Shown in pieces: positions 18,485 to 52,068 of a DNA stretch of 64,000 nucleotides (positions are counted from its first letter, which is position 1; every line of letters begins with the position of its first letter). A program made the translations under genes and the position numbers. The notes beneath the pieces were generated by a model, which did not search any database, had not been told where the DNA came from, and was given only the letters and a program-made list of their open reading frames with translations. The stretch is from Haliotis rubra (lineage: Eukaryota): contig NW_025767288.1 of NCBI RefSeq assembly GCF_003918875.1, positions 558,001 through 622,000 of the forward strand, read 5' to 3'.

Positions 18485-19408
18485 CTAATGGTGGTCTAAA
18501 AATGTTTGGCTTCGGCGGGAGAAAGATAGTGTGTTTTGGAACAATGACCGAAGCAAAGCATCGTTTACCTGACACAAATGTCAGCCTCTCAGCCCCTGGA
18601 GAATGTTACATGGTTTCCTTATCTGGCGTGAATGAACAGTCATACATATTATATCATTTAGTTTACACAGACACTTAATAGTCATGCTGCACACTGTCAA
18701 CGTTTACAGACATTTCTCTGAATGATGATCACAAGATAGAATGTCATAGCAACGTGTCATGGAAACATTGATTGTTGGTCCAGTTGGAATAAATATAATA
18801 ATATGGAATTGATATTTGTGTCCAACATTGAGTACCTTATACGGGTACTGTATGCAAATTGTGTCGGAAAATAAAAGTAGCATGGAAAGTTGACCTATGA
18901 GAGTTGGTCATATGATTTTGTACGTCATATGTCCCCAGATCCATTTAAGATCTTAGAGTGTTAGTTTAAATGTGTGCCCTGGAAAGTTGTAAAGACATTA
19001 CCAATGTTTCTGTTAATAGTGATGTAAAAATGCCGGAATTTGTTGCGTCCCATGTAAGAGTCGTAAGAAATACATGTTGTATTGAATGGCAAACATGGCG
19101 GGTTTTAATGTTAATGCAGAGGAAGGTACCATTGTCAAATATCAGCATAAATTACTGACTTTGATTGTCATTTATATACACATGAAACGATGCGACTACA
19201 AACAGATTCATACCCTGTACATATGACTAAATGATTAAATACACCATTGATGGTGTGGGGATATTATCTAAATTCTATAACAGACTCTACAACGAGTATT
19301 TGGTATGGAATACTGCATGGCAATACTTTGTTAACATGCTTTGTTAATTAAGAATGCATTATCATCAAAAGCCTTGCAAAGTCCAGGACCTCGTACCCCA
19401 AAGCTACA

Positions 19409-19676
19409 TAGTTGATCTTACTACAATATTTAGATCGATTCGTAGTACAGAGCCGAGATCCACAAAGCGATCTTGGTGCTTAGTTGATCTAAATACTATA
19501 CTAAGATCGATTCATAGAACAGAGCCAATATCCACAAGCGATCTTAGCGTTAAGTTGATCTTACTCCCATAGTAAGATTGCTCCATGGGACAGAGCCAAG
19601 ATCCACAATGCGAGCTCCGCGGTAAGTTGATCTTACCCCCATACTAAGATCGATTCCAAGAACAGAGTCAAGATCC
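19409..19676. repeat. ~72-bp tandem repeat (about 4 copies) with internal palindromes
   Basis: agttgatct recurs at 19410, 19482, 19553 and 19625; units contain agagcc(a/g)agatccaca and gatcttag/ctaagatc. Confidence 0.85.
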
Positions 19677-20489
19677 CTTGTATCCTCTTGGAGGCTTCTT
19701 TATGTTAATCTCCATGGTTTGGATATGATTACAGGAAGAGGCTAAAGGATCTTAACATGGCTCCAAGACAAGAGTAGCTCAACGTTACCGATATACTCAA
19801 GGCAAGTCTGGCTTCTTGAAGACCTCCTTCCGTGACCTTCTTGAGGACCTCTTTCCGTGACCTCGCGGTCGATTCACCCAGTTTCTTGGCTAACACAGAA
19901 CAATACAATACGGAAGTGCATAGACAGTTACATATACATGGCAGTGATGTCTTAGTGCATTAGTACATACCACACTTGTCAACGGTTAGTCTCAATGAGT
20001 GTGAAAGACAACATCCTTGAAGCGTTAGTACTTCAACACGTAATCCATAAACTTGACCTGCACCAACTGAGTATCATTGGGAAAGGTCTTAAGTACAATC
20101 ATACCATACCCCAACATGTATAATTGTTGGGTAATATTTTTAAAAAATCAATATTATCGTACCCTCCTTGAAAAAACAATAAGTGAAAATAACAAAAATG
20201 GGTTGAATAAATTCTTTGTGTCGGCCGACCGTAAATTATTGCGGCCCTCAAAGCAAACTATGATGAAGTTATGTTGCCTTTGATATGGCAGATTACACGA
20301 GTGTCTTACATTACAATTCTTAAATAAACTGATAAATGTAATTGGAAAAGATGTCAGCCAAAGACAAAGGTCAGCCCATGTGTAAAGGTATCAATTCTAG
20401 GTCGGAACCCTAGCCTACGACCTAGACATGAGAGTCGTGGTGTCATTGGACTACTGTCTTTCACGTCCTTGACCTAGCGGTGGTTGGGA

Positions 20490-23400
20490 TCAGCAGCTGG
20501 AATCCTTGCGAGACTTGCTGGACATCTCGCACGACTGGCTCTGTTTGCGCATCAGTGATGCGGACTGTGTAGAGGCACTGGGGCGCTTCTTGCTGATGTG
20601 GAGTATTCTTTTGTATTCCTTGAGCACCTGCAGCAGAAAATTACAGCATCGGTATGAGTAAAGTACATTTGTGTTTCTTGATTTCACTTGATTTTTTTTG
20701 CCTGGGCCTGCTGGATTCGAAAACTCGCTCCGATTATGATCATTGGCAGGTCAGCACCTTACCTATGTTCATGGTTTTCATCGACAGGTATACCAACCAA
20801 ATGTAGTACAGACATTTGTCATGATGTCTCATGACGCCAATTTATATACGAGATAAAACGATGAATGGTTCAACAGACGGGTAAATCAACAATACAAAAT
20901 CATACAGTCTAAGTACATGCCCCTATGTTTCAAAACCCGTGACGACCCCGGTTAGAATTGGCGTTCAACAACCCACGCTTGTCATGAGAGGCAACTAACC
21001 GGATCGGGTGGTCAGGCTCACTGACTTGATTGACACATGTCATCTATCCCAATTGCATAGATCAACGCTCATGCTGTTGATCACTGGATAGTCTGATCCA
21101 GTCTCGATTATTTACAGACCATATGGCTGGAATATTGCTGAGTTCGGTGTTTAACAAACAGACAAACAAAACAATCAATATTTCAAACATAAAACACCCC
21201 TATCTGCGATGTGGTAGGACTAGCCCAGCTTCAACATAACATCACGGAAATGGGTTATGAGTAATCAATAAGTCCTGTATGTATCCAAGCTACTGAGACT
21301 ATCTCGGTCGTCTCACCTTCTTGTTGAGGAGGCAGTGGAAGCAGAATATGAAGAGACCCTGGAGACTGTTGAGGATGGTGAAAATATAGGCCAGGGCGAT
21401 GGTTTCCTTGCTGATGTAGAAGTAGCCAAATGTCCAGGTGAGACCGAGCAGAACCTCCATCGACAGAGCACCCTGCAGCCATGTTCTGGAGAAACCAACA
21501 GAACAATAAATACAGGATTCTTAACCTGTTTCACAACGACTGACTAACGGAAGATCATGATGTATTACAAGCAGTTGGTGGGTCAGTGGACCGAGCCAAC
21601 TCAATTACTAAGGCTATGGTCTGATCGAAGCCTGTTTCGCCTCGATTACGAGTCCTGACAAAGACCACAACGTTTCACTGATGTGGAAAACAGTACGAAA
21701 CGCGCGTCCTGCTGGCTTCCACAAGAAACTATAAAGGACCCGTGGTTTACCTGGCCCGAAACTGAAGGAAGCACTCATAATATACTTTACACAAACCTTC
21801 AATATCGGATATGAGCGTACAGTCTGTACTGAATGGATTCTTGATAGAAAGACAATGCAATTATATTTTAATATTAGTTTTCTTACTACTTGATCAAATT
21901 GACCAGTTGTATTAGCCACTTTAATGTTTAAGCATAAAACTACATTTTCTTGTGGACTAATGCCTCGTATTTTAATACTGTTTGTAAAGTATGTCAAAAG
22001 TAGCTTCGTCTTACGATCAACTATTTACTTACAGTTTTCCCCGTTTCTGTGTTGTTTTTTACCTTAAATATGGCCTTATTTCGTGACTGTAAATTGTCCC
22101 TTTGTCATTGTTGCTGTCTTTAACTTATTCACTTTGTCAAAAGGTTATTTCCATGACCGGTAAACAAAATCCTTAGAATTAAACGAAAAAAAGAAGTATT
22201 TTTAGGTTGCTTTTTTAACTTGTTAATCTGTTTCCTAACTACTTGGTTAGTGGACTTGTTTGGTATACACACGTATTAGATTTAGAATATGATTGTGTTA
22301 AGTTACTGTGTGGAAACAACATTAGAAAGCATCGATATTTTGTCTGGTTGAAGGTGTCACCTACCTCATGCCGCCTGAGTTCTTCTCCTTGCTGTTGAGG
22401 ACGTACTCGGAATGACGACACACCATCACCATGGCATACGTCAGGATTATGGCGTTTACCTGGGACATGAATAGATGTGAAATATTTAGGGTATACGGCT
22501 GAATGAAATAAACAGAGGCCTCATTGTATGTTCTATCTCGTTCTATGTAAATTGATGTCTTTTGTTTGTTTGTTTGTTTGTTTGTTGCTTCACGCCGCAA
22601 AATGCCAGCTACATGACGATTGTCTGTACATATTCCAGCCTAGATCAGACAATCCTGTGATTGAGATCATGAGCATCGATCTACACAATTGAGTTATGAT
22701 GGGATGCATCAAACAAGTCAGCCAGCGAAGACCAATTCTAACCCGGATTTTCAAGGGCAGCAAATTGGTCTCTGATTCCGTGGAGCAAGAAATCACCAGT
22801 AACCCATGCATGATGACACAGCAGAACTTAGGTAAACAAATTGCAGTAGGGGGGTTCGGGTGAGTGAGTTTAGTTTTATGTCGCTTCTTAGCAATAATCC
22901 ATCAATATCACGGCGGGGGACACCAGAAATGGGCTTCACACATTGTACCCATGTGGGGAATTGAACCCGGCCTTCGGCGTGACGAGCAAATGCTTTAACC
23001 ACTAGGCTACCCCACCGCCCAGGGTGATCCTAGTGTGGCTGGTTTAGCTCATCGCCAGCTCAGGTAACCTTGCCCCCTCTACACGCAGCCCAGACAGGTA
23101 GTGGGACTCCTTAGCTCCACGACTGATGACATATTGCCGCCATGTTCTAATTATACTTTCAGATATGATATAATTCCCTTGCCATTTTAGAGGTTTGATG
23201 GTACCAAGATAAGTTTCATTACTCACCAAAAGTATCAAGGCAACTGGACCAGCGAAGCTCCAAATGAAGAAACGGTCCGTTGTCAGCCAACAGCTGAAAC
23301 AAATACAGTACATGTCTGGTTTTAAAATTAGTTCCATTAACGTCAAGTGTGATTTAAGCGGAAGAGTTATCTTTTCTTTCCAAAAGGGTTTACGCCGCCA

Positions 23401-32400: not shown

Positions 32401-35400
32401 CACTCGCCCCTTGAAAACAAAGGCAACTGATATCGACTAACGTGTAGGCCAGGATCTTGCCAGCAGGCTACACTCGTTTTAACATCATGGATACGGTTAA
32501 TTACAGTAGAGATTGCGACTGTGGAATCTTTCAGGTAATGAAGCCAAGACATTATCTCTGAGTATAAATATAGAAATTCACCACTAATTCCTGATTAAAT
32601 TCTTGTTTTCCTTACTTAGACACTGAGGGTCCGGTGTTCATGAGTGTGTAGGTTGCCTTGGCCCAAGTCAATATTGTGTTCCGTAAACTGACGTGCAATA
32701 GGATGTACGCACCTGTTGTTTTTTTAATATTTATTTATTTATTTATTTTTTTTTTTTTTCACATCATTTTTTATTCACTTCACTTGGATACACTTTGTAT
32801 GAAACAATCCGTGGACAATATAAGGATTGGCATGTCACTTTGTTTCAATTTCCACTGGGGGAAAAAGAGCATGTAAAACTGGAGCAATGGCAGATACACA
32901 CGGGGTATAAGCTATTTCATTGTCACAATCACAGAACATTTTGGAGTATAATCCATTTTCTCTCAAATAAATTCATATTGAAATTTTTCTAGCAATATAT
33001 TTATTTATTTATTTAGGGGTGGGGTGGGTGGGTGGGTGCGTGGGTGTTGTTTTGAAAAGTACTTTGATTGTGACTTACCAGTCAGGACCATTGTATACAT
33101 TGCAACATCAGAGAGGAGCGATAAACGTGCCATTGGAATGTCGCAGATGGGGTTTTAAACAGCCATATTAAACAAAGCAGGCCATCAGACTATTGAGACG
33201 CGTCAACCAAACTGACCCGACATCTCAAAGAACCGGAAGACCGGGAGTGACCATCCCGCAAGTTGCGACTTCTAAAGGGCAGATAATGCACTTACGGACA
33301 TTTTTCAACCATTTTAGAAGCAGACGAAATGTCGAAACCGGAAGTCATGAGACTTCCAAAGGGATGATGATACCTTTACATGTATGTACTTTTACCAGCC
33401 ATTTGAAATCAGACGATATGTACAAATAGTAAGTGGTCTGTTGGATGAGACTTTAATAGGTGGCAGAATACCCTTATCTTCTTGTTTCACTCGTTAACGT
33501 CGGTTTTATACAAAAATCAGAAAGAAAACTTAAATCAAGTCTCTCACTCACCTCTACTCCTTCCACGTCCATCAAGATAGCAAAATTGGTAAGATGGTCA
33601 CATTTGCACGTGGTGTGAGTGTTGTTTGTCCCGGCCAAACGGCAGCCATCTTGAGACCAACGACCGTAGCCTTTGCTGAAACATAAACAAGAACACTATA
33701 GCTAAGACAAGCAATATACTATGGCGGGGCGCTTTATTATCGTCTTGTCAGTTTATTGACAGAGTATACATAGAGAAATTTTCGCGATAAACTTCAAGGA
33801 AGACCAGCACGAGATATTTCTTCTCAGGTTTATGAGGAACAAACTTGATGGCATTTCATGATGACATGCACGAATGAGGTGTCTAGATATGTCGACTACA
33901 GTGGGATACAGAGGCCAATCCTCGGCAATTTGGAACAGCCAGGCCTTATGTAGCCTCTTACTCGCATGTCTGCTTGACAAACGCATTATCTCTGAATATA
34001 TAATTTTGATAGAAAGACAAAATAAAATAATTCCTTTTAAATTGAAAAGGAGTCCCAGTGAGATAGGAGACTGAACCTGAGGAAATCAAGACTTGCTATA
34101 GTTAGGGCTTTAGTATTGCAGAAAGGGCAGGGTGCAGGGAGGGAAAAATGCGGTTCAAAGACTGTGAAACAGACTCGCTGCAAAAGTACATAAAATTAAC
34201 TACAGGTCTAGAAAATGGTTTGAGTGTGTAGAATTTGTTCGTTGCTCAACGCCATAATAGTTCAACTGACTGACATGACTTTCCAACTAATCACGTTTGG
34301 ATAAGACGATCTTGTGATGACAGAACGAACATCGATCGTGGGATCTATTCAGAAGGTATTCGCACTCAGTCTGGTACTGGCACTGTGCAGGCATATTCAC
34401 AATTCAAAAGCAAATTCAACATTTTTCAGTCACCACTGAAAACCTTACATTTTGTTTCTCTAATGAATGGACAAACCACTTGGGACCCACAATAGTGTCC
34501 AATGAATTGTATAATTTTCTCAGCATTTTCACTATCAGTTTGTCTTATAAAAACGATAACATTGCGAAGTGTATAAGAAGGTGGGCGACATTTTAAAACT
34601 ATATTCTGATTCAACAGCACCTCTTTTGATAAACAAACAGATTTTTTTAACAGCATTTTTCAAACAGCTCATGGTAAAATGAAACAGCTTTATCAACAGT
34701 TCATCATGGGGATGTCCCTATGTTGGTGAGAAAAAAGAAAATTGTTTAAGTAATAAGTCGAATTATCAGACTGAATTCGATGTTTTGATAAAAATGACGT
34801 CACACACACGGACATCAAACACCAAGCATAAACTACACGCAGCGGCCGACGATTAAATGTATTCCGTTGTCTTTGACAATGATAAGAATGTCCTGTTATG
34901 ACTCGACCAAGCCTTAGACTTCAACCATGTCCATCAAGCACTTAAGCTACGTTACCAAGAGTACATATGACATATTTAACCTTAGATGAAAGTAATTAAT
35001 TAAAAAACAGAAACATCAAAGGTTCGGCGCTCTTGACACTTTGGGCGGTTCCGGATATTCGATCCGACTTTTGAGTCCATTCTTATAAACTGCTTTCTAC
35101 CAATCAGTAATAACACTTCTATCATCCGGATGATAAATTAAAATCCGGAACAAAGTTTAGACACTCAGACGACGCGCTGACACAAGTCTAAGTCCGCCCC
35201 CCGTCGCAGACGGCAGGAAACGTGGCGACGTCGGTCTTTGCCTGCTGGGGCATATACACGTACACTCTCCCATAAACAGCAGCGATAATGATAAAGGTTT
35301 AAGTTCCAGATACGTATAATTTGCAATTGGAAGATCCCGGCTGTGGGTGTGATGTTGTTCTAATTGAATGACACATATTTTGGGGGACAGTCTCTGTCAG

Positions 35401-38400: not shown

Positions 38401-41400
38401 TATGATAAGAATACTTTACAACATTAATAATAAAATTATGCGAGTCTGAGGCCATAAAGGTCAACTTAATGCTTCTCATTCCACCGTTGAGTCAAATGCT
38501 GCAAAATGTACCACTGGACAAACAGAAAATAACCAGTAAGGTACGAGGAGTCGCGGATGATCTGTCCCGAGGGATAATCCGTAATTCCAAATTTCGACTG
38601 TGAGCTACTATTGTTTTCCGCCGATTTTTAGCAAGAAGTAACTGGCAGGGATTGACGTAAGACTGATGTTCTAACATGACCTTAGAACCAAACAATGTCT
38701 ATAATATTACATTTAACCTATTTATATACATGTTCTTTTGACCTTAAAATACTATCCGTGTATTATCACATACACATTTAAACCAGACTATATATCATAA
38801 CCTGTGTCATCTTCTAGATAAGGACAAACTTTATGGATGAACAGCTTCTTTATTCGGATTTATATTCATCCATAAAGTTTGTCTTATCTGATTCACCAAC
38901 TTCAAAACATGCCATAAAACAAGCTTTGCCATCTTTTTTCATTATGTATTTCTATTTTTTTCATTTAGTCATATTACAATTATGAATAAATGCAAAATAT
39001 TAGGAAAACCTGTTATAATATAGCTTTGAAATGAATGAGGTCGAGAATACGCATTGAATTCATGTTAATTAAGAATATTCCATATCGTTACTACATGTCA
39101 TTATGGAGAATGGCCATGAGAAACGTTTCAGTGAATGAACGCTCATGAACAAATTTGAATTCTGTTTACGAGTCAAAATATAATGCACTGAAAAGGGAAA
39201 ACACTCTACCACTTAAAACACAGAAATACGGTCTGTATGAAAAGCTGAACCTTTCATCAAAACAAGGTCATGAGATATGCTTTTAATGCCAAAATAAATT
39301 ATGTCAACGCGAGTGGCCTCCACAGTAGATATGCACTGTGCAAGCACTTTGCTTTAGATGAAATACATGTGTATACCCTTCCCCCTAGAAAGCCACGTAT
39401 TTCGGGAACATATTTATCCACAACATACCTCGAGGTTTGAGGTCAAAGCTTGTCTGAACTACAGCTTAGCAAAAGGTGGCGTTTCTTAGAAAACCCAGAA
39501 AATTTCATGAATAAAGACCCTATGTGTTATCTTTAAACTGCAAAGGCTCTTAAATATTTACTCAAAGGTTCATAGTAAAGCGCTTTCAAAAATTAAAACG
39601 AAATTGGGCCTCTAAGAAAATACTGAAATTTGAGCCTTTCTTAACCAAGACGCACATTGGGGGAGTGTCAGCAAGCCACAGGCGCTTTATCATAACACGA
39701 CAGGTTTGACATTGTTTTACCTACAAAAAATAAACACGCCAGATGCACACAGATTAAAATTAATTCAACGCTTGTCCCACGCAACAGTGAATTCGGTCTT
39801 TCAAGAAATTAGTTTCCAGATCATATTTTATCTTTCCTAATTTTCTGTTGCTGATAAGAACTAGAAAGCAGGTTCACGTTTACCACGAGACAATGCGAGA
39901 AAGGATGGTTTTGTACCCTCTGGGGCGCCATTTGTTGAGAAAACCCGGATCTATCAACACAGAACAAGCACTTCTTGTGTCGACAAATACAAATCACTCT
40001 CAGTTACAAATTACTGTACAAAAACTTCAATCGCCGATAAGATTGTTTTGTGCCATACTTAAATCCCGATGAGTGAGACTGAAATGATAAGATTGCGAGA
40101 AGGTGTATTATAAATAACTATTTGAAAGTGATAAACCAGGGCGGGTGCATGTTGTCTACAAGGTTTCATTCACAATGGAACCGACGCGTTTCTTTGAGTC
40201 ACGTTCTTTCTCCATTTTCAAAGAGCTTCATTCGACTCATGCACATTTGTTTGATAAAGCTAATTGAAACATTCAAGGTCAGAGTAAAGCTTTCAAAACA
40301 TTTGTGGCAGTTGCTTTCTCTTAGTCTGTCTCACAGTCGATGAACCAAATAATGTCCCCTACTGCCTAGCCCTCTCTACAATGCTGAAGCCATAAATGTA
40401 GCATGTCTAGATTTCACCAGATTTCCTGAATCTACTGGGGCTCCTTTTCAAGTTAAGTAGGCTTATATGTTACTATGAAAATTATATATATTCAGGGGCT
40501 AATCTTTAGTCTAGCTTGTTCTTTGAAAAAGATATGAATTCGGACAAATTCTTAACTTTTAACAAAGGTTATATAGAATCGGTTTCCAATATTATATATA
40601 TTTTAAAATCTACTATTATAAATAGAGTTCTAGTTTGTACATTACGGCAATGCCTCTCCATTCTCCTACTATTGGTATATTACTATATTAAATGAGTTTT
40701 AAAATAACATTTTTAAAATGCATCACCTTATTCGGGAATTTGTCTGTGTTTTGTATTTACGATGCATATGTTTTGTTGAATATCGCCAGAGGTTTTTCAT
40801 GAAAAAAATATATCGTAACATATTCCAACATGTGTTATGATAACATTATAGCCGCATGCCTTCACATATGGGTATTTAGTGGCATATGATCTACCTATAT
40901 ACGACCAAATCTCCCATTGATTATAGCCGCATGCCTTCACATATGGGTATTTAGTGGCATATGATCTACCTATATACGACCAAATCTCCCATTGATTATA
41001 GCCGCATGCCTTCACATATGGGTATCTAGTGGCATATGATCTACCTATATACGACGATATTTCCCATTGCACAACTTACCGCATCACATATGTTGCACAT
41101 ATTTGTATAGTCGAAGGGGAAATATCAACTTTTACTTACCAATATTTTCATCCTTCGCTTCAATAACAGTTGGATGATCGATCACAGCTGCCATGGCAAC
41201 TGTTGTTGATTCTATGGCAACCAAGAGATTGGAAGCAGATCTTGCCTTGTCCTCTGGTGCCATTTCTTCCCACGTGGACGACTTGTTCTCGGAGACGACG
41301 TTGCTGCCGGCTTTAACAACGTTCTGTAAATATACAAAATGGTTGACTTGTTACCATTAAGTAAAGCAGAAATGGTTCGATTTGCGGAATCGACCTGAGC

Positions 41401-44400
41401 TGGAACACAAACAAGAACAAAATGTGTATTCGGTATCAGAGGCCACATGGTTAAGGGCACAGTTAATAAGATGAAGCTTGTACGCAAGGACATGTCGGAC
41501 AAATGTTATGTTATCTTAATGCAGTAATAATGATATATTAACGACCAGGTTTCTTCTCCAATCTTTCACAACTGTTTAAGTTAGCTTCACATCTTGATAT
41601 CATAGTTTGATTATGATTATTATGGTGCGCGCATTTAACGTGAGAATAATGTAACATGAAGCCAAAATGACCGTCAAAGAATATAACAGGAATGTGCCAG
41701 CGTACCTTGACGATACTTTTCACAGCTTTCTCATCTTTGGGTTTGCTATCCTGGCTCTGGGTGGCGAGACTCTGAATGACCTTGGAGGTCAACATGACAT
41801 CTTCCACCGACATTTCCTCCGTCTTGGTGACCTCCACAAGGGCTGTGGTCATCTTGACCTGTTCCTCCTCGTTGGCCTCCTCCACAGACGCCTCCAGCAC
41901 CTACATCACACAGAAATGTTGGAAATCTAATACAATAATACCATTACAGTCGACTAACCAGGGATATGTTTTGTTTCTTGTTTAACGTCTCATGGAGACT
42001 CGAGTGTGGGCCAGTGGTTGTACAATGTCCCACATCGTTAGGATTCCATTACAAGTCATCAACAAAGTCACCAAGCCTGATAGGTCAGCTTCTTTGATTG
42101 TCATTCTAGAAGTTGAGGAGATGTATAATGAGGACAATTTTTATGGATATACAACTTCATTATTGCTTGCTTGACAACGACATTAGAATTTCTGTCGATA
42201 CGTCGCCTGTACAGAATAAAGAAGACTTAGTTTATATCCATCAAAATTGTCCTCATTCTCCTGATAAGTCAGATCTCGTAAAACACAACCAAATGTTTAT
42301 GAAATATTGCCAAAGAAAACGAAAAAGACGAAAAGGCAAAAGATGATGCCGATTATCGATTCTGTCCAACGTTAAGGACATCGTCTCAAGGCATGACTGA
42401 TTAGTTGAATAGAATATAGTGTTCCTTCTGCCACATATTCAATTAAAATGTTTAAAGGATTAGGTGCATTCAAGGCGGCACACCCTGTTGCTACATATCC
42501 GCTTCAATAACGGAGAGTCTGATCAGAGTACTCTGTAATTAGTACTAGACTAAGTACAGTTACATGAAGGTTACATGGTTACGTGGCGACAGCGGACACT
42601 CCATACTGCTACATGACACACGTCAGCCAGGATGTAGACTCAAGCGAACTTGAGATGCTTTCTTCCCTGTTTCCTGACGCACCATCTTCTGTACCATATA
42701 ATACTGATGGGCTTGTTCCGGGTGTGTGTGTTGGGGGAGGGGGGAGTCAGGCGGACAATGGGGAGGGGAACCGGAACGGAAGGGTAGAGGGCAAGGACAA
42801 GGGTACTGCGATGAATAAATATGATAAGGAGCAAGGTCATTCGGCATGACCTTCCTGTGTCCCATAGATTGAAATATCATGTAACCGAAGTTCCCTGGTT
42901 CATTGAAATGTACTGAACAAAACAATTAAGGGAACATAAATATTTTTACATTTATTTTCTAGATAAGATTGAGCCCAATTTCACACACACACCCTCCAAA
43001 AAATCCAAAATCAAACAAAGAAAAAACAACAATAAAAATACAATAAAAACAAACAAAACAAAACAAACAAACAACAACAAAAAACACAAACAAACAAAAC
43101 AAAACAAAACAATCATTGTCCCCTAGTTTTATGTTCAGTATATTATGCTCGAAAGAAGTTTAAGAACACATAATTTTTCACCTGACCATACTTAATCATT
43201 CATATCATGAAAAGTCGAATGAAAACTTCGTGTTCTTTGAGTTCAATGAGTTCTTTGAGTATTTGGAGCTCTGTAGTTCTAGAGGCGGAGTAGCAATTGT
43301 AATATTGTTAAGGTTTTGAAGGAAATATAATGTCTCATCGTCTCAAATGATGCATCGAGGAAATGAGTTGTGCCGATCATGTAACAATACGATAAATACC
43401 ATCAGTATTGGATAGTCAGGCATAGTCTTTGTCAAGTGCAGATTAATTATGATACCTTTTTGAGGATCTTTTTGAACTTGGGAGAGGCACATCCGGCCAG
43501 ATTTGGTTCTCCTCGCCAACAGGTCGGGTTGCTGCCACATCGCCATGTTGCAGTTCCTGATGAGAGATCAAATGGTATGTACATATCTTGTTACGTATTC
43601 TATCATACTTACTGTCGGGCAAAATAAGTATACCTTTCAAAATTAAATTTGACAAAGAGGGCGACTGTTGACAGCGTGACGAGCAAACGCATTAACCACT
43701 AGGTACCGCACTTACTACACCTAGTGTAGTTCTTGTTTCCTTTGAACACTTTGCCTACAGGGGACAGTGAGTATGAAATTCAATATCTTTAACTTTAAAA
43801 TATGCAAATCTGATTAAGGTGAGCTAAATTTAAGAGAGACTGAATTAAATCTACGACAAATCTGACCCGTATTACAGAATAATCGTTCGATTATCAAATA
43901 ACTTTTATACTTTAATGTAGTGTTACCCATCACTGACTTTCAGGTATTAGGTCATACGATTGTCAGTGCTATTTTGCCTTCAGCACCTAACTGAATTTGT
44001 TTCGGTGGTAAATCGAGACTGGTTGTTCTCTTGTGTTAAAGTTAGATATTACGTCAATCTCTCTGTGAACACTGCTCTTCTTTCCATGAAACGGTCTTAT
44101 CACTTCGACCGTTGTAATTCGATGTTCAAGTATGAAAGATGTGTGGATCAGGGCCCGCTTATTTGTGGTCGTATCATTGGATAACAAGTGCGTTTTTTCA
44201 TGTTCATATGTTCATATTTCCCCACTACGTAAATAGACGAGGAACACACACGGTGTGTGTGTGCATCTTTTTATGAAAACAACTGTCGCTCATCCATGCT
44301 ACATAGCTTCACAGGCTTGACAAAAACAGATACTTCGCCGATCTTCGGTGTAAACAGACACAAAATGTTTTTATCTCAATTTCAGAGCCCAGAAATAGGC

Positions 44401-47400
44401 AACGTTTTTCTGGAATAGCCTCTGTGAAGCTTTGAAAAATGATCTTCCGTGTAGAATATACAGCGAAACATTTAATGCGAGCTAAGACGACCTCTCACAC
44501 GTTATATTTCAATATTTTGAGTTGGATAAAATACGAAAATTAATTTCATGAAGAATGTCCATAAATGCTTAATATCAATGTACTTATGTAGTTTTGCTAC
44601 ATACCATCTCTATATCGAAGACAGTATGATACATCTCGTAGGGGACCACACATTCTTTCAAAACTAAAACCTTAAAAATGGGGCTCATGTGATCACAATG
44701 GATGCTAGATATGAATATTAGTTTGAGAAGTGACATAGTAAAAATATCTGGACCAGTGAAGATCCGGGTTAGAGTTAATCTTCAGTAACCCATGCTTGTC
44801 GTAAGACTAACGGGATCGTGTGGTCAGGCTCACTGACTTGGTTGACACATGTCATCGTGTCCCAGTTTCGTAGATCGATGCTCATGATGCTGATCACTGG
44901 ATTGTCTGGTCCAGACTCGATTATTTACAGACCGCCGCCATTTAGCTGGAATATTGCTGAGAGCGGCGTAAAACTAAACTCAATCAATCAGTCAAGTAAT
45001 CAGTCAGTATATCTACTTGTGATATTGATAATAGGTTGTGCTGAGTAATCTTTTGCTCTCTCCCATTGGTTTACAGACATTTGAGTATTAAGCAGGGTTT
45101 GGAACGAACGCTTGCTGACTGTCTTCAACAACACTTTAGCCAGTAGATCTCTGGTTTAAAGGGGACACGAGTTGCCTAGTAATCCATGGCGCCATAGAGA
45201 TTTAAACCCAAGACTCGGAACTTCTAACTGTTCTACATTAATCAGACTTAACTAAATACTGTTCAAATAACTCATAACTTTAATAGAATATTGAAAATAC
45301 ATAAGCCAAAGCTGGTATCTACATTACCAGCCGCCATGTTTGACAGCTTGTCTATCTCCTAGCGGGATCTCGCGAGAGATTACAACTCTCATTTTTCCAA
45401 TGTTTTATTATTCTTAAAAACAAAACAAACTCGATCCTTTCCAAATATGAAGAAGATGCCCTGTGATTACAACAAAGCTTGGCGAACGTCGGACATTAAG
45501 ATACAATCTCCAGATGTCAAAAACAATTTTCTAGCTGTCAAAATATACCAAAAAAGTTAAACCGAAATATTCAGACTTTTTAGCGTCGTTTAGGGTTATT
45601 TTTTCCTGTATTCGGAACCAGAAAGTTTGCAGTCAAAACGCCTTATTTCTCCCCATGTTTCTTTAGAATGCCAAATAAATTCTGATAATAGGTTTGGAAA
45701 AATATAGATACGGGTGTGTATGTGATAAAAACACACATTGCACAGAGAGACACCGACCTCACCACAGAAGAATTATTTTTACAATTCAAATAAAATATGT
45801 TTAAGACGGGTCTCCGGGGTAAAAACCGAGACAACTAAAAACACTTTATTTCTGTATAAAAGAAACGCATTTGTCCCAAGTGACTGTACTATCTGATATG
45901 TTAGTTTCACAGTTGACATGACTTGAACTCAGGCGACGGGGATGGGGGATAAGAGAGGTCATTCCCCGAGGAGGAAATATGACGTTTAAAACAGCTGTGG
46001 AACTGAGGAACTCACGTACTTCGTTTTTTAATATTTTTGTTCTGTGTGCTTGCAATTCCTGTCATATGTGCGCGACGGGGAAACAGGAGATCGGAAATGG
46101 CGTTTGTCAAAGGTTAATGACGTACATTATTGAAAATATTCACGACGCGCACGCATCTGTGCCCTGTTGCCATATTATTGACAAGGAAAAGTTGATACTC
46201 AGTGTTCAGTTATTCCTTATTCTCGCATGTTATAACTGAATGGTGAACATGAAACCAAATAATACTTGTGAATGACAATCTATATATTACACTTTTGAAG
46301 TCACTAAATATATCTTAATGATAATCATCATTTAGATATCAATAAAACACAAAAATCCGACAATGTGTGTCTACTTAAAGCTTAAGGCTCAACTCAGCAA
46401 TATTCAACCCCTAAAACTGTCACAGAAAATGCCTGAAAAAAATTGTGCTTTATTTTGGTCGGCCACATAAAATACATTGTTGCAAGGAATAGAATTAAAT
46501 GCCGAGACTCTATAAGTTTTAACGACAAAAAAATGTCTTGATTTTGAAGTTGAAGCTAGAAAAAAATACTTGCTCACAATATAAATCGCCCCTCCCCTGA
46601 AAAGAAAAGAAAATGCATAATAAATTTCTTTCTTCATCCCACACCCCGAATATCGAAAGTTAGTCCTTTCTACTTACCAGAGCCACTTCTACATTTTATT
46701 TCAGCGAATGTTCCAGCGACCGTTGCAGGCCAGTTCATGTTGGAGGCATAGGCTTCTGGACAAGTCGTTGCACCCCTCTTATACTGCTGCATCAAGGCTG
46801 CGCTGGCCATGCCGTCACTGTTGACGGGCTTGTTATTCTCAGTCAGCTCAAAACATCCATGAAAGGGAGACAACTTTTCCTCCCAGGTGGTGCTGGTGAG
46901 CACGCTTAACGTCGTCCTCCAGTTTGGTACTGGCGTTGTTGGAGGAACACGAGAAGTCTTTGGTGACGTTGATGTGGTCACTGTTGGTGAGGTAACAGGC
47001 TTTGTCGTTGTTGATGAAGACGTTTCAGGTTTAGATGATGTTTCCTGTTCGGATGATGTTTTAGATGATGTTACTTGTTCGGATGATGTTTTAGATGATG
47101 TTTCCTGTTCGGATGATGTTTTAGATGATGTTTCCTGTTCGGATGATGTTTTAGATGATGTTTCCTGTTCGGATGATGTTTTAGATGATGTTTCCTGTTC
47201 GGGTGATGTTTTAGATGATGTTTCAACAACTGATTGTGTTTCCACTCGTGACGTTGAAACTGCTCCTGGTGTTGTTTGCGTTTGTGTTTGCGTTTTTGGC
47301 TGATCCTGTGTTGTAGGTTTTTGTGCCTCGGTGCTTGGAACTTCGGTCGGTTTTGTCGTAACTACCTGTTGTGTGGTGGTTGTAGTTGTTGTTGTTGTTG

Positions 47401-48640
47401 TAGTGGAGGCTGTAGTTGCAGACGTTGTAGCTATCGTTGTGCTTGTCGACGTGACGGCTTCTACGGTGGTTTGGAATGTAGGTCGTTGGGTTACTGAAAC
47501 ATGAACAATTATGTGCATACCTTAGTTTAACTTTTTATAAAAAATGTTTAAAATACTTAATTCAGATATAAATACACACAGTGAAGTTCAGAACTAAAAT
47601 AGATGAACTGCATTAAAGAAACGGTATTATCAGTTCCTCTGTATGTCAAGCACGTGACGTCATCCTCCTGAGACGACACAGGTGAATAACATATTTATAA
47701 AAAATAAAGGTAAACATCGTTATTCAGGGCAATGAGACAATTACTCTTGGGAACGTATATAGTTATATACCAGTATACAATTAAAGGACAGAAATATATA
47801 CAATTATATGACAATTACTCTTGGGAACGTATATACTATTTACTCTCCGGAAATATATACAATTATGTGACAATTACTCTTGGGAACGTATATTCAGTTA
47901 ATGGACATTTACTCTTGGGAACTCACCTACAATTAATGGACAACTAACATTCAGAGCGTACATACAACTAACGGCCAAATACAGATGAGGCGGGAGATAC
48001 AATTTATGGAAAATTACTTTTCGGAACAAATATACAAATAAAACAGAAACACTCATGGGAACGTATAAACATTGAAGAACACTTTCTCTTGGTATGTATA
48101 TACAATTACAGAACTATTACTCATTTTAACGTGAATACAGTTAATAGAAAGACCAGTTTATATTCGACTGTTAACAGGTAAAGCATAAAACTACATACTC
48201 TCATGACGTTCGCAGATAAACGGCCTGAGGGTTTCATAAGCTCTATCGTTGAGAAATCCATTAAACCGTATTTCCACACAGTGCTCGACGGATCTTCCCC
48301 GGCCATTGTTGGGTTCCCCAGGTCCCCATTGGCTGAAATAAATAATAATATCAATGAGGTGGGTATCATGTATATATTATCATATGCCCAATAACCAAGT
48401 TGTAAAAGGAAGTACAATAAACTAAATAGATAATACGCCGATCATGGCATATTACATACCGCCAATACTTTGTTTTTGCTTTAAAACAAAAGTGTGCAAA
48501 CCATAAAACCAGGAATGATATGAAACAATATGATTGTAACGATATTATGCTTATTAAACAATTTAGAACCTAGAAACAGAACAAGTGGTGTATCACAGAC
48601 ATGTTTCTGTTTCGGTTAATATTCAGTCTCGCTACTACTG

Positions 48641-48700
<60 letters not shown>

Positions 48701-50486
48701 TTACTACTAATTCTACTATTACTACTAGATATCATTTTCAAGGGCACCATTATTGCCCCAATAAACAAGTGTCCATTCATTATTTCTTTCCCAACCCTCT
48801 GAGGAGAAAACAAAGCTAGCTGCCTCTCGCACCCTACCGGGTACCCATTCACTGTTAGGTGAACATACGTCTGTTTGGAAATGAAGTCACTTGCTCTAGG
48901 AGACCCACTGACACAGTATTCAAAACGGCCTAACACCGCTCATTTGTGGAACATTTGACTGAGAAACATGCATGTTTTGCTATAAACAGAAGTCGACGAG
49001 GCAGGCTAATCGGGATAAAAGAGAATAACGGTTCTCTTCCACTCACGTGATCCTCCTGCTAAAGGTACCCCCGTCCTGCCAGATGAACTTGTTGAGGTCG
49101 GTGTGCCATTTGAGGCCAACCCACCACGTCAACATGTCGTCTTTCGTTATCTGCTTCTTCAGTTCACGAACAACCTTTTTCTGAAATTACAATAAGTTGT
49201 TGGTATTTGAAGAATTTACAATATTTACTTGTTACATTCTAGTAAATTTTGAAAATAGTAACTAACCCTTCATAGTGTGTCGTAGAGATATTGCGTCTAG
49301 TGTTTCCGTATCGTAAATGTCATGCTTTTTTGTAATGAGAATGGAAAATGGACCGACTTTAGAACTTTGAATACAAAGCTTGTCAACAACCCAATTTATC
49401 ATATTGTGCCTTGTGATTTACGAATACTGTATGGTGCTAACAAAACTAGTAACGTAATCGGTGCGAACAATGCTTCCATCAAACGGTATTAGGTTTCTGG
49501 TGAACCCAAGGGACGAAACTCTGTATAGCGAATTGCGGTGCCTTAGACGACCTCATTCGTAACTACTCGTGTCATTGCGACAAGCCGGATGGCGACTCGT
49601 ACCCCTCACGTGGACATGTTCACGACTGGGCCTTGTCGAAGCGCAAACGGGCACAGAGAAGAAAATAGTCTAGGGCTCTTTCCAAGGAAAGGTAGCTCTA
49701 AATTTCCAAACATGGCTACTCCAAGAAAACAACAAGAACAAATTGGTTTAACACTAAAGTCACTTTAGGTAAGTGTCTTATGTCGTTAACAAATGTCAGT
49801 AACAAGATAATTATATAATCACAGAAATAAGAATAAATATCAATAATCGCAAAGAAACTATTTGGCCTCATTTCTCATTTCACTACGCGCGGTTTGATTG
49901 GTTTGCCACGATTCTTGGCAATAATGGCGTACTATACAGATACGAGTCTTCTTGTAGATCATTGAAAGAGGCGAGTAGTTATGAATAAGACGACCTATCA
50001 ACTTTTGATGAGTTACGGGGCGGTGGGGTAGCCTAATGGTTAAAGCGTTGGCTCGTCACGCCGAAGACCCGGGTTCGAATCCCCACATGGGTACACTGTG
50101 TGAAGCCCATTTCTGGTGTCCCCCGCCGTGATGTTGCTGGAATATTGCTAAAAGCGGCGTAAAACCAAATTCAGTCAGACAGTCAGTTGATGAGTTACAG
50201 CAGGAATGCTGCTGCGTTTATGACACTTCGAGAAAACCAAACACCTTCGAAATAGAACACTATAACTACAGAGGGTTGTATGTTTTAGGACATACAACTT
50301 AGGTCCGGAAGCTCACCTTCTCCGCTTTAGAGCTGATTGATATCAAGGTTCCCCCTTCTTGTCTGCAGGCGTTTCTGGCGTCCTCCCATGACATCTTCCT
50401 GGTGTCAAACTTGTAGCAGGCACGGTGCATGACAACCCAGCCGCTACCACATGACTGTTCCTCCTCTCGTCGACGACGACTGTGGG
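20490..50486 (-). CDS. Latrophilin-like adhesion GPCR: C-type lectin, Ser/Thr mucin stalk, HRM, GAIN/GPS, 7TM (5' signal-peptide exon not located)
   Basis: 19 GT-AG exons in continuous frame (3122 nt). C-type lectin: 50486-50317, 49180-49047, 48332-48199 (CYKF...WEDARNAC...WWVGL...WGPGEPNN...FICE). Mucin and start of HRM: 47493-46678. HRM: 43556-43456. GAIN: 41900-41706, 41323-41140, 38262-38143, 37976-37783, 36503-36451 (CSFWD) and 33675-33552 (WSQDGC...CKCDHL|TNFAILM, the GPS). 7TM: 28377-28274, 27754-27652 (IHKNL), 25404-25251 (LHYFFL...WMFIEG), 24489-24423, 23293-23227 (CWL...WSFAGP), 22459-22365 and 21485-21317 (LLGLTW...NSLQG). Tail: 20627-20490 (TGA). Confidence 0.93.
20935..21170 (+). 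mobile_element. Headless retroposon family B (diverged full-length copy)
   Basis: cccgtgacgacc...ggttagaattgg...gtggtcaggctc...gatcactgga...gctggaatattgctgag...aaac tail. Confidence 0.8.
22560..22757 (-). mobile_element. Retroposon family B (diverged, internally deleted)
   Basis: (tttg)n tail, agacaatcctgtgat...gaagaccaattctaacccgga. Confidence 0.7.
22859..23021 (-). mobile_element. tRNA-derived SINE family A
   Basis: Near-consensus reverse-strand copy. Confidence 0.88.
24651..25044. mobile_element. Tc1/mariner (pogo/Tigger-like) MITE
   Basis: TA|cagtggaagctgtcaaaaccgg ... ccagtttagacagcgtccactg|TA, with internal repeats of gctgtcaa...ccggc. Confidence 0.75.
25462..25561. mobile_element. 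~100-bp palindromic MITE (second copy at 26844-26950)
   Basis: ggcctagattttcgaagctctct...agagagcttcgaaaatctaggcc; flanked by a CAG duplication in this copy. Confidence 0.85.
26844..26950. mobile_element. Palindromic MITE, same family as 25462-25561 (opposite orientation)
   Basis: ggcctagattttcgaagctctcttagcgctaagatagtc ... gactatcttagcgttaagagggcttcgaaaatctaggcc. Confidence 0.85.
28551..28718 (-). mobile_element. tRNA-derived SINE family A
   Basis: Near-consensus reverse copy. Confidence 0.88.
29684..29848 (+). mobile_element. tRNA-derived SINE family A
   Basis: A and B boxes; TSD cccagtatca. Confidence 0.88.
30637..30803 (-). mobile_element. tRNA-derived SINE family A
   Basis: Near-consensus; TSD gtgtttgaaaga. 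Confidence 0.9.
31937..32063 (+). mobile_element. SINE family A, internally deleted
   Basis: gggcggttggatagccc joined directly to the B-box region, then body and (CACT)n tail. Confidence 0.8.
35782..35950 (+). mobile_element. tRNA-derived SINE family A
   Basis: Near-consensus; TSD cagt(g/a)tttacc. Confidence 0.9.
36097..36342 (-). mobile_element. Headless retroposon family B, full length
   Basis: Bounded by the 12-bp TSD tctcagaatact (36085-36096 and 36343-36354); shares the 3' tail gctggaatattgct...cggcgtaaaacta(CACT)n with SINE A. Confidence 0.88.
36914..37485. mobile_element. Non-autonomous DNA transposon with TTAA target site (Kolobok-like AG...CT ends)
   Basis: TTAA|aggtcacttgcaac ... 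gttgcatgtgacct|TTAA. Confidence 0.75.
38815..38925. mobile_element. Penelope-like inverted fragment without hammerhead
   Basis: agataaggacaaactttatggatgaa / ttcatccataaagtttgtcttatct, a tail similar in style to 18440-18480, and a flanking repeat tg(t/c)catctt. Confidence 0.5.
40846..41069. repeat. 75-bp tandem repeat, 3 copies
   Basis: ttatagccgcatgccttcacatatgggtatttagtggcatatgatctacctatatacgaccaaatctcccattga x3; explains ORF 40797-41072. Confidence 0.95.
44752..44995 (+). mobile_element. Headless retroposon family B
   Basis: gtgaagatccgggttagag...gtcgtaag...ggtccagactcgattatttacagaccgccgcc...cggcgtaaaactaaac. Confidence 0.88.
47031..47225 (-). repeat. Coding 30-bp minisatellite ([10 protein letters not shown], ~6 copies) in the adhesion GPCR mucin stalk
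   Basis: ttagatgatgtttcctgttcggatgatgtt repeated with very few differences. Confidence 0.95.
47740..48120. repeat. Degenerate tandem repeat (acaattactcttgggaacgtata core)
   Basis: The core recurs about 8 times with increasing decay. Confidence 0.7.
48632..48727. repeat. (ACT)n microsatellite
   Basis: Direct reading; explains the poly-Thr and poly-Ser ORFs. Confidence 0.95.
50017..50185 (+). mobile_element. tRNA-derived SINE family A
   Basis: Near-consensus; TSD ttgatgagttac. Confidence 0.9.
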
Positions 50487-51893: not shown

Positions 51894-52068
51894 AGGGGGC
51901 GGTTGGGTAGCCTAGTGGTTAAGGCGTTCGCTCGTCACGCAGAAGACCTGGGTTGCATTCCTCACATGGGTACATTGTGTGAAGCCCATTTCTGGTGTCC
52001 CTCGCCGTGGTATTGCTGGAATATTGCTTAAAGCTGCGTAAAACCCAGCTCAATCACTCACTCGCTCA
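51894..52068 (+). mobile_element. tRNA-derived SINE family A
   Basis: Near-consensus; TSD cttacg(a/g)tcatag. Confidence 0.88.

What the first reader, a model, noticed from the sequence alone, without database searches (positions are those of the whole stretch)
20490..50486. Latrophilin-like adhesion GPCR whose adhesion module is a single EPN-type C-type lectin on a mucin stalk: candidate glycan-sensing receptor
Seen: C-type lectin, ~200-aa Thr/Ser stalk, HRM, GAIN with an intact HL|T autoproteolysis site and a TNFAILM tethered agonist, latrophilin-like 7TM, and a very short (~45 aa) tail ending DSSC. No rhamnose-binding lectin or olfactomedin exon was found between 50486 and the HRM. Known: vertebrate latrophilins use RBL plus olfactomedin domains and have long PDZ-binding tails; EPN C-type lectins bind mannose/GlcNAc/glucose in a Ca2+-dependent way. 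Inference: a lineage-specific receptor coupling carbohydrate recognition (microbes, mucus, substrate cues) to mechanically triggered G-protein signalling.
Basis: partly seen in the sequence, partly recalled or inferred. Interest (0 to 1): 0.7.

Follow-up and report, generated by a model that had tools for sequence, protein, structure and literature searches.

The report
Mollusc latrophilin paralogue with C-type lectin
This abalone gene really does encode a latrophilin-type adhesion GPCR whose only outer binding module is one C-type lectin on a sugar-coated stalk. It is not a one-species oddity: NCBI has already modelled it, the family is conserved across molluscs, and its function is untested.

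Summary
On the minus strand, 19 GT-AG exons (50486 down to 20490) encode C-type lectin domain (CTLD), a 214-aa stalk (51% Ser+Thr), HRM, GAIN/GPS with HL|T and TNFAILM, a 7TM and a 45-aa tail ending DSSC.

- **One transcript.** Spliced RNA contigs join the three lectin exons to the stalk/HRM exon, and other contigs run about 3.9 kb further downstream.
- **5' end.** The missing exon lies 40.5 kb upstream, outside the window, and encodes only a signal peptide.
- **No RBL or olfactomedin.** Neither domain matches anywhere on this contig. A separate canonical RBL-latrophilin sits on another contig.
- **Family.** The same architecture occurs in gastropods, bivalves, a chiton and cephalopods. These proteins form one well-supported clade among lophotrochozoan RBL-latrophilins, with short tails (median 48 vs 359 aa).
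- **Lectin site.** EPN...E...ND is the family consensus (15 of 20 orthologues keep EPN), but several lineages lost it.
- **Oddity.** The assembly has Tyr at a near-invariant CTLD cysteine; all four laid runs read Cys.

Glycan sensing is plausible but untested. CTLD-aGPCRs were already described in placozoans and amphioxus. Verdict: a new variant of a known kind, of moderate interest.

The parts
50317..50486 (-). Exon 2 (170 nt, aa 41-97): start of the mature protein and N-terminal third of the CTLD. Entered in intron phase 1.
   Evidence: Pfam Lectin_C E 1.1e-4. Acceptor ag at 50488-50487. RNA contig piece 50317-50488 (table 8). Exon model.
49047..49180 (-). Exon 3 (134 nt, aa 98-141): middle of the CTLD with the WWVGL motif.
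   Evidence: RNA contig pieces 49047-49180 joined to exons 2 and 4. Exon model. Alignment.
48199..48332 (-). Exon 4 (134 nt, aa 142-186): CTLD long loop and beta strands with EPNN, the Glu before Cys (VEHC), LND and FICE. Left in phase 1, so the CTLD is a 1-1 exon module. Codon 48238-48236 is TAT (Tyr) at the conserved Cys.
   Evidence: Pfam Lectin_C 69-107. Sequence. The four laid runs read C at + strand position 48237, which gives TGT (table 3). That column is Cys in 18 of 20 family members.
46678..47493 (-). Exon 5 (816 nt, aa 187-458): Ser/Thr-rich stalk followed by the N-terminal half of the HRM, in one open frame.
   Evidence: One ORF at 47521-46673. Composition. HRM profile positions 3-27. 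RNA contigs cover it, with an assembly break in the repeat at 47060-47169.
47030..47224 (-). 30-nt tandem repeat, 6.5 copies, inside the stalk exon (decapeptide [10 protein letters not shown]). The H. rufescens orthologue has far fewer copies.
   Evidence: TRF: 96% matches. Gap in the tblastn alignment to P0001.
43456..43556 (-). Exon 6 (aa 459-492): C-terminal half of the HRM.
   Evidence: tblastn with P0001 and P0180. HRM E 0.0024 on the orthologue stretch P0001:385-470.
41140..41900 (-). Exons 7 (41706-41900) and 8 (41140-41323): helical part of the GAIN domain.
   Evidence: Pfam GAIN E 1.4e-9 for 41135-41350. Exon model.
36451..38262 (-). Exons 9 (38143-38262), 10 (37783-37976) and 11 (36451-36503): beta-sandwich part of the GAIN domain up to the first GPS cysteine.
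   Evidence: tblastn. GAIN 507-702 in P0180. Exon model.
33552..33675 (-). Exon 12 (aa 741-782): GPS motif with the cleavage triad HL|T and the tethered-agonist start TNFAILMDV.
   Evidence: Pfam GPS E 1.2e-13. Sequence.
21317..28377 (-). Exons 13-19: the seven-helix domain. Exon coordinates: 28274-28377, 27652-27754, 25251-25404, 24423-24489, 23227-23293, 22365-22459, 21317-21485.
   Evidence: Pfam 7tm_2 in four exons. 7tm_2 790-1025 in P0180, E 1e-59. The TM3 exon matches ADGRL3 and L2 best among solved structures. Exon model.
20490..20627 (-). Exon 20, coding part: the 45-aa cytoplasmic tail ending DSSC, plus the stop codon.
   Evidence: Sequence. Tail length.
18430..20489 (-). 3' UTR. The extent is inferred, not mapped.
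   Evidence: RNA contigs of 4292 and 4315 nt start at 47059. The exons from there to the stop sum to 2250 nt. This leaves about 2.04-2.07 kb of UTR if it is unspliced.

Best explanation
This is the single-copy Haliotis rubra member of a mollusc-wide paralogue family of latrophilin-type adhesion GPCRs. In this family the usual N-terminal rhamnose-binding lectin is replaced by one C-type lectin domain and the long cytoplasmic tail is reduced to about 45 residues.

Shown here:
- A 20-exon gene. Exon 1 lies 40.5 kb upstream of exon 2, outside the window.
- The encoded protein has, in order: signal peptide, CTLD (three exons forming a phase 1-1 module), a 214-aa Ser/Thr-rich stalk with a 30-nt tandem repeat, HRM, GAIN/GPS with the HL|T triad, a TNFAILM tethered-agonist sequence, a 7TM closest to ADGRL1-3, and a short tail.
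- It is transcribed and spliced as one mRNA.

Inferred mechanism:
- The CTLD has the Ca2+-site-2 ligands of mannose/GlcNAc-type lectins (EPN, Glu, Asn-Asp). Held away from the membrane on a probably O-glycosylated stalk, it binds glycans on another surface (cell, matrix, mucus or microbe).
- The GAIN domain is self-cleaved.
- Pulling on the anchored N-terminal fragment exposes the tethered agonist, which activates the 7TM and a G protein.
- With almost no tail, the scaffold or PDZ-type coupling of classical latrophilins is probably absent.
For: One transcript:
- Contig 22 of run X3 joins 50488-50317, 49180-49047, 48332-48199 and 47265-47170.
- Runs X1-X3 have zero depth in the introns, where DNA run X21 has depth of about 55-80.
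- Contigs of 4292 and 4315 nt continue downstream from 47059.

Gene model:
- The GT-AG exon set translates to P0180 residues 41-1080.
- Exon 1 was found in the same contig, with donor GGAG|gtaagt in phase 1.

Domains.

No RBL or OLF on contig C2398.

Paralogue status:
- The next-best TM3 match in the genome has 50% identity, on C2, 13 kb from an RBL exon.
- That gene encodes the 1202-aa RBL-latrophilin P0245. Its TM3, TM4 and TM5 exons have matching sizes, and it has a long tail.

Latrophilin class:
- The orthologue P0001 matches ADGRL3 at 442 bits over HRM-GAIN-7TM.
- For the C-terminal fragment alone: ADGRL3 291 bits and L2 271, against E5, D1 and L4 at about 180-224.

Family:
- Lectin_C+GAIN+GPS+7tm_2 is found in many molluscs.
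- These proteins form one clade with support 100/95.
- Tail beyond the 7TM model: median 48 aa (n=66) against 359 aa for RBL forms (n=82).

Lectin site:
- The family consensus is PGEPNN..G.E.C.E....G.LND..C, kept from chiton to octopus.
- The CTLD model has pLDDT 86.9. Its best fold matches are CD23, Endo180 CTLD2 with bound sugar, and SPL-1 with GlcNAc.
Against: - No binding, cleavage or signalling data exist for any member.
- EPN or ND is lost in Mercenaria, Mya, Candidula, Batillaria, Babylonia, Biomphalaria and Plakobranchus, and is EPD in Mytilus. Sugar binding therefore cannot be the universal function of the family.
- The Trp of WND is Leu here.
- The assembly itself has Tyr at the conserved disulfide Cys of the CTLD, which would weaken the sugar-binding loop if real.
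- HRM is below Pfam's cut-off in Haliotis.
- Whether the runs laid (coded organism A) are the same species as the assembly is unknown.
Confidence: 0.75

Rival explanations
1. The architecture is the same, but the CTLD is a protein-binding (non-sugar) adhesion module, as in many CTLDs. On this view the receptor does the developmental or neuronal cell-contact work of other latrophilins rather than glycan or microbe sensing.
For: - Several orthologues lack EPN/ND yet keep the whole receptor.
- The best fold match, CD23, binds a protein ligand (IgE) through its lectin domain.
- The 7TM is of the latrophilin type.
Against: EPNN, the Glu and ND are the family consensus. They are kept in distant classes (chiton, cephalopods, gastropods, bivalves), which argues for selection on the Ca2+/sugar site in most lineages, Haliotis included.
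Confidence: 0.3
2. In the sequenced H. rubra individual the lectin domain is impaired. The Tyr at the conserved Cys breaks the disulfide that fixes the sugar-binding loop, so this allele is a weakened or non-lectin receptor.
For: - TAT at 48238-48236 in the assembly and in the public model P0180.
- The column is Cys in 18 of 20 family members.
Against: - All four laid runs (three RNA-like, one DNA) read the Cys codon (table 3).
- A single-base consensus error or a rare allele is at least as likely.
- The rest of the gene is intact and expressed.
Confidence: 0.12
3. The gene is the ordinary latrophilin orthologue, or a false fusion of a lectin gene with an aGPCR gene.
For: NCBI's automatic name is 'L3-like'. 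The first intron is very long (40.5 kb).
Against: - Spliced contigs join the lectin exons to the stalk/HRM exon.
- The stalk and the HRM start share one exon.
- A separate RBL-latrophilin exists on C2.
- The same architecture is modelled independently in dozens of molluscs.
Confidence: 0.03

Closest known systems
Latrophilins: vertebrate ADGRL1-3, Drosophila Cirl, C. elegans LAT-1
   Same: - HRM-GAIN/GPS-7TM core; the best solved match is ADGRL3.
- HL|T site and a TNFA(I/V)LM tethered agonist.
- A Ser/Thr-rich stalk before the HRM, as in vertebrate latrophilins (my own knowledge).
- Branches among lophotrochozoan latrophilins.
   Different: - No RBL and no olfactomedin; a CTLD stands in their place.
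- A 45-aa tail instead of about 360 aa.
- No conserved C-terminal PDZ-type ending across the family.
The abalone's own RBL-latrophilin (P0245 in H. rubra on contig C2; P0147 in H. rufescens)
   Same: - Same genome.
- About 50% identity in the 7TM.
- Matching exon sizes for TM3, TM4 and TM5.
- HRM, GAIN and GPS are present.
   Different: Its N-terminus is a SUEL/RBL lectin with a short linker, and it has a tail of roughly 340 aa.
CTLD-bearing Secretin/Adhesion-type GPCRs of placozoans (PMC6321704) and the Lectin C-type adhesion GPCR of amphioxus (PMC2246102)
   Same: A C-type lectin domain coupled to a family-B 7TM. Coupling of pattern recognition to GPCR signalling was already proposed for the placozoan receptors.
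   Different: - Orthology was not tested here.
- The mollusc family is a latrophilin derivative with HRM and a full GAIN domain, is mostly single-copy, and is conserved across a phylum.
- The placozoan set is a lineage-specific expansion.
- The amphioxus protein carries additional domains, according to PMC6321704.
CD23, Endo180 (MRC2) CTLD2 and the bivalve SPL-1 lectin domain
   Same: Canonical long-form CTLD fold: TM-score 0.74-0.77 by query length, 26-33% identity. Best sequence matches are CTLDs of the mannose-receptor family.
   Different: Here the CTLD is a single copy at the tip of an aGPCR. It has Leu in place of the Trp of WND, and Tyr at one Cys in the assembly.
ADGRE5/CD97-type receptors (my own knowledge)
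   Same: Small N-terminal binding modules on a mucin-like stalk above a cleaved GAIN domain, with a force-dependent activation model. Third-ranked 7TM similarity.
   Different: EGF modules instead of a CTLD; no HRM; a vertebrate family.

Membership tests
Adhesion GPCR (class B2) | GAIN domain with GPS motif directly before the 7TM | tested here: met
   GAIN 507-702 (83 bits) and GPS 731-775 (67 bits), followed by 7tm_2 790-1025 in P0180. Also seen exon by exon.
Adhesion GPCR (class B2) | Cleavage triad H-L|T/S with the GPS cysteines and a hydrophobic tethered-agonist strand | tested here: met
   ...CKCDHL|TNFAILMDV... read in the window. Actual cleavage is not testable with these tools.
Latrophilin (ADGRL / Cirl / LAT-1) | 7TM and GAIN closest to ADGRL1-3 | tested here: met
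   ADGRL3 at 442 bits over HRM-GAIN-7TM. For the C-terminal fragment: L3 291 and L2 271, against E5, D1 and L4 at about 180-224. The clade sits among RBL-latrophilins (the tree is midpoint-rooted and contains only latrophilin-like hits).
Latrophilin (ADGRL / Cirl / LAT-1) | HRM domain before the GAIN domain | tested here: inconclusive
   18.7 bits in P0001:385-470, below the cut-off of 26.2. The Mytilus orthologue scores 29 bits, above the cut-off. The cysteine/Trp pattern is present in exons 5 and 6.
Latrophilin (ADGRL / Cirl / LAT-1) | N-terminal rhamnose-binding (SUEL) lectin | tested here: not met
   No PF02140 match on contig C2398 and none in P0180. Exon 1 is only a signal peptide.
Latrophilin (ADGRL / Cirl / LAT-1) | Long cytoplasmic tail (vertebrates: with a PDZ-binding end) | tested here: not met
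   45 aa after ...NKK. Family median is 48 aa, against 359 aa in 82 RBL-latrophilins.
Vertebrate-type latrophilin | Olfactomedin domain | tested here: not met
   The only PF02191 matches are on contigs C2445 and C150.
Ca2+-dependent carbohydrate-binding C-type lectin domain (EPN type) | CTLD fold | tested here: met
   Lectin_C at 56 bits. Model pLDDT 86.9. TM-score about 0.75 to CD23 and Endo180 CTLD2.
Ca2+-dependent carbohydrate-binding C-type lectin domain (EPN type) | Ca2+-site-2 ligands: EPN, a Glu two residues before the beta-3 Cys, and Asn-Asp of WND | tested here: met
   GEPNN ... VEHC ... FLND in exon 4. The Trp of WND is Leu. This is the family consensus.
Ca2+-dependent carbohydrate-binding C-type lectin domain (EPN type) | The conserved disulfide cysteines | tested here: inconclusive
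   The assembly has Tyr at the Cys after ND. All four runs laid read Cys, as do 18 of 20 relatives. The other cysteines are present.
Ca2+-dependent carbohydrate-binding C-type lectin domain (EPN type) | Measured Ca2+-dependent sugar binding | not testable with these tools
   Needs recombinant protein and a glycan array.
Placozoan / amphioxus CTLD-GPCRs | Common descent of the CTLD-7TM combination | not tested
   No sequences of those receptors were retrieved. The mollusc clade nests among RBL-latrophilins, which suggests an independent origin.

The most novel reading that the evidence does not exclude
A latrophilin paralogue that goes back at least to the last common ancestor of chitons, cephalopods, gastropods and bivalves swapped its rhamnose-binding lectin for a Ca2+/EPN C-type lectin and lost its long tail. 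It works as a force-gated glycan sensor for microbes, mucus or substrate. That would make it the first conserved bilaterian receptor coupling C-type-lectin pattern recognition directly to a G protein.
Probability: 0.3. Interest if true: 0.6.

Novelty: new variant of a known kind. Interest (0 to 1): 0.42.

Why it matters
Adhesion GPCRs are thought to turn binding plus pulling into G-protein signals, but few have a known ligand class. This is a phylum-wide, mostly single-copy latrophilin derivative whose only binding module is a lectin with a readable sugar-site signature. That gives it a testable ligand hypothesis, and lineages that lost the motif serve as natural controls.

It also shows how the family evolved. 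A phase 1-1 exon module replaced the RBL, and the tail was cut from about 360 to about 45 residues, which implies different intracellular coupling from classical latrophilins. Invertebrate latrophilin surveys that I could read list EGF, Ig, LamG and FN3 as extra domains but no C-type lectin (PMC6422961).

For abalone and bivalve aquaculture it is a candidate surface sensor. It would be worth checking in haemocytes, gill and larval settlement tissue.

Tried and rejected
- **CTLD-only word search.** It gave only 53 candidates and two hits, the gene itself and its H. rufescens orthologue. It says nothing about non-mollusc relatives. 'Mollusc-only' therefore rests on the best 120 of 1572 hits of the 7TM-based search.
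- **Exon-wise Pfam.** It found nothing for the second HRM exon or for the GAIN exon at 38105-38281. These were placed by alignment to the orthologue.
- **Literature.** I found no description of this mollusc family. A sacoglossan survey lists CTLD and GAIN/GPS in one figure legend (PMC7663992), but that could be polycystin-like proteins. 'Latrophilin' entries in Mytilus, oyster and Biomphalaria expression tables cannot be assigned to either paralogue.
- **Rfam.** At gathering score it gave no match in 17500-20600.
- **Earlier findings by words.** The search was blank.
- **Depth across runs.** I did not use it as an expression level, because the runs are contigs.
- **Joined models.** All whole-protein work used the public models P0180 and P0001. 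The only joining was a local yes/no check that the GT-AG exon set translates to P0180 residues 41-1080; only the last 10 residues of the joined translation (already shown) were printed, and nothing was saved.
- **Complex prediction.** Not attempted, because no partner is proposed.
Full report
**Where and what**

The window is G000:C2398:558001-622000 of a 1.378-Gb, 2855-contig assembly. The finding lies on the minus strand. Six-frame reading and exon-by-exon Pfam scans gave these matches:
- Lectin_C at 50302-50514 and 48194-48376.
- The first 25 positions of HRM at the end of the long ORF 47521-46673.
- GAIN at 41135-41350 and 37777-37998.
- GPS at 33477-33695 (E 1.2e-13).
- 7tm_2 in four exons between 27786 and 21302.

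The sequence shows ...CKCDHL|TNFAILMDV..., and after ...CLLNKK a 45-residue tail ending DSSC and a stop. The acceptor before the first lectin exon is at 50488-50487, so the exon starts at 50486, in intron phase 1.

**One transcript**

Of the runs that hold this DNA, three (X1-X3, coded organism A) behave as RNA when laid on 46600-52599. They have zero depth in the introns, where DNA run X21 has about 55-80. Their contigs also skip the introns.
- Contig 22 of X3 (866 nt) lies on 50488-50317, 49180-49047, 48332-48199 and 47265-47170. Lectin exons 1-3 are therefore spliced to the stalk exon.
- Ninety-nine further nucleotides at the 5' end of that contig match nothing within 50489-52599.
- Contigs of 4292 nt (X3) and 4315 nt (X2) begin at 47059 and continue about 3.9 kb beyond 46677.
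- The only break, 47060-47169, falls in a 30-nt tandem repeat (6.5 copies at 47030-47224) inside one uninterrupted ORF. It is an assembly break, not a gene boundary.

**The public model and the 5' end**

A single-exon search of the representative library with the TM3 exon returned a 1048-aa protein with 98% identity (P0001). [quoted passage not shown] Its first 41 residues match G000:C2398:648992-649111 on the minus strand, 27 kb beyond the window's end. That exon encodes only a Met-initiated hydrophobic leader and ends GGAG|gtaagt in phase 1, which fits the phase-1 start of exon 2. The first intron is about 40.5 kb.

[quoted passage not shown] A set of 19 GT-AG exons in the window translates exactly to its residues 41-1080. 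So the window is blacklip abalone, and NCBI's pipeline has already modelled the gene with this structure.

I sent no joined model of my own to any search or fold tool. Whole-protein analyses used P0180 and P0001. The join was a local equality check only.

**Architecture**

Pfam on P0180 gives Lectin_C 71-184, GAIN 507-702, GPS 731-775 and 7tm_2 790-1025.
- HRM scores 18.7 bits on the orthologue stretch, below the cut-off. It passes in the Mytilus orthologue at 29 bits.
- Residues 187-400 are 31% Thr, 20% Ser and 7% Pro.
- The CTLD is encoded by three exons (170+134+134 nt) bounded by phase-1 introns. This is the form expected of a shuffled module.

**Not the ordinary latrophilin**
- The SUEL/RBL profile has nine matches in the genome, none on C2398.
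- Olfactomedin matches only C2445 and C150.
- The second-best genomic match to the TM3 exon (50% identity) is at C2:2894103-2894252, 13 kb from an RBL exon at C2:2907186-2907332 on the same strand.
- That locus encodes the 1202-aa RBL-latrophilin P0245. Its TM3, TM4 and TM5 exons match in size (53, 22 and 24 aa), and its tail is roughly 340 aa.
- The H. rufescens counterpart P0147 has SUEL_Lectin, HRM, GAIN, GPS and 7tm_2.

The abalone therefore has both genes, and the gene in the window is single-copy.

**Class**

Against solved structures, P0001 matches ADGRL3 at 442 bits over HRM-GAIN-7TM. For the C-terminal fragment alone, ADGRL3 (291) and ADGRL2 (271) are ahead of ADGRE5, ADGRD1 and ADGRL4 (about 180-224). 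The TM3 exon alone gives the same order.

**A conserved family**

Among the top hits, proteins with an N-terminal CTLD come from:
- Gastropods: Haliotis, Gigantopelta, Patella, Littorina, Batillaria, Pomacea, Babylonia, Nucella, Biomphalaria, Plakobranchus, Candidula.
- Bivalves: Mytilus, Ostrea, Saccostrea, Pecten, Argopecten, Dreissena, Sinanodonta, Potamilus, Mactra, Ruditapes, and several paralogues in Mercenaria and Mya.
- The chiton Liolophura.
- The cephalopods Octopus and Argonauta.

Most non-mollusc hits among the best 120 (Lingula, Owenia, Arenicola, Lineus, Priapulus, arthropods) carry the RBL; none carries a CTLD.

In a maximum-likelihood tree of the 7TM, the CTLD-bearing proteins, plus four rows without a full CTLD (three short fragments and the Lymnaea model with a partial one), form one clade with support 100/95. 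It sits inside a group of lophotrochozoan RBL-latrophilins. The tree is midpoint-rooted and contains only latrophilin-like sequences.

The short tail is a family trait. The median beyond the 7TM model is 48 aa (n=66) against 359 aa in RBL forms (n=82). The DSSC ending is confined to Haliotis.

**The lectin site**

The family consensus is ...PGEPNN..G.E.C.E....G.LND..C...FICE.
- EPN is present in 15 of 20 aligned orthologues, including chiton and cephalopods.
- It is EPD in Mytilus.
- It is lost in Babylonia, Biomphalaria and Plakobranchus, and in Mercenaria, Mya, Candidula and Batillaria.

Haliotis keeps EPN, the Glu and ND, with Leu for the Trp of WND. An AlphaFold model of the domain (pLDDT 86.9) matches CD23, Endo180 CTLD2 with bound sugar, and the bivalve GlcNAc lectin SPL-1 at TM-score about 0.75. 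Most lineages, Haliotis included, thus keep what a Ca2+-dependent mannose/GlcNAc-type site needs. Its repeated loss means sugar binding is not the only thing the receptor can do.

**An oddity**

Codon 48238-48236 is TAT (Tyr) at the cysteine that follows ND. That column is Cys in 18 of 20 relatives. All four runs laid read C at + strand position 48237, which gives TGT (table 3). This could be an allele, a species difference (organism A is coded) or a consensus error. I could not decide which.

**Mechanism (inferred)**

By analogy with other aGPCRs, I propose these steps:
1. The CTLD, held out on an O-glycosylated stalk, binds a glycan on another surface.
2. The GAIN domain is self-cleaved at HL|T.
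3. Traction on the N-terminal fragment frees TNFAILM..., which activates the 7TM.

None of these steps was tested. I put the architecture and family assignment at about 0.95 and the glycan-sensor mechanism at about 0.5.

**Literature**
- CTLD-bearing Secretin/Adhesion GPCRs are described in placozoans. That paper proposes a link between pattern recognition and GPCR signalling, and notes one amphioxus aGPCR with a CTLD (PMC6321704; PMC2246102).
- The review of invertebrate latrophilins lists EGF, Ig, LamG and FN3 as extra domains, and RBL/HRM/GAIN for molluscs, with no C-type lectin (PMC6422961).
- I found no paper describing the mollusc family.

**Verdict**

This is a real, expressed and correctly described gene. 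The reading 'latrophilin-like with a CTLD in place of RBL/OLF' holds. The novelty is moderate: it is an already modelled member of an undescribed but phylum-wide variant of a known receptor class, and its function is untested.

Noticed in passing
window 48236-48238 (minus strand codon): The assembly and the RefSeq model have Tyr (TAT) at a near-invariant CTLD disulfide cysteine. Three RNA-like runs and one DNA run all read the Cys codon here.
   Followed up: partly
window 47030-47224: A 30-nt coding tandem repeat (6.5 copies, decapeptide [10 protein letters not shown]) lies in the stalk. The H. rufescens orthologue has far fewer copies, so stalk length varies between congeners. The repeat also breaks the short-read RNA assemblies.
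   Followed up: partly
That falls inside the interval where another note proposes a hammerhead motif. Rfam at gathering score finds nothing in 17500-20600.
   Followed up: partly
window 50017-50187 and 51896-52001: Two copies of a very high-copy element lie in intron 1. Summed contig depth reaches about 3x10^7 in the DNA run and 10^5 in the RNA-like runs, with many false 'joints' between the copies.
   Followed up: no
window 40800-41075 (intron 8): Three tandem copies of an open-frame unit of about 75 nt (…[25 protein letters not shown]…). They lie in an intron and were not examined.
   Followed up: no
window 48620-48730 (intron 3): A trinucleotide microsatellite that reads as poly-Thr or poly-Ser in open frames on both strands. 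It can be mistaken for mucin coding sequence, but RNA depth there is zero.
   Followed up: partly
C-termini of orthologues P0041, P0023, P0163, P0207, P0229: Bivalve, chiton and cephalopod members end in a shared Tyr motif (…GSYEVY…, …GSYELY…, …DGSYAL, …SYEM, …YEMAAP…). Haliotis lacks it. It may be a sorting or phosphorylation signal.
   Followed up: no
G000:C2:2882850-2916943 (loci L003-L008): This is the canonical RBL-latrophilin gene of the same genome. Its public model P0245 looks poor between the RBL and the GAIN domain: a low-complexity His/Tyr/Asn stretch where the HRM should be.
   Followed up: no
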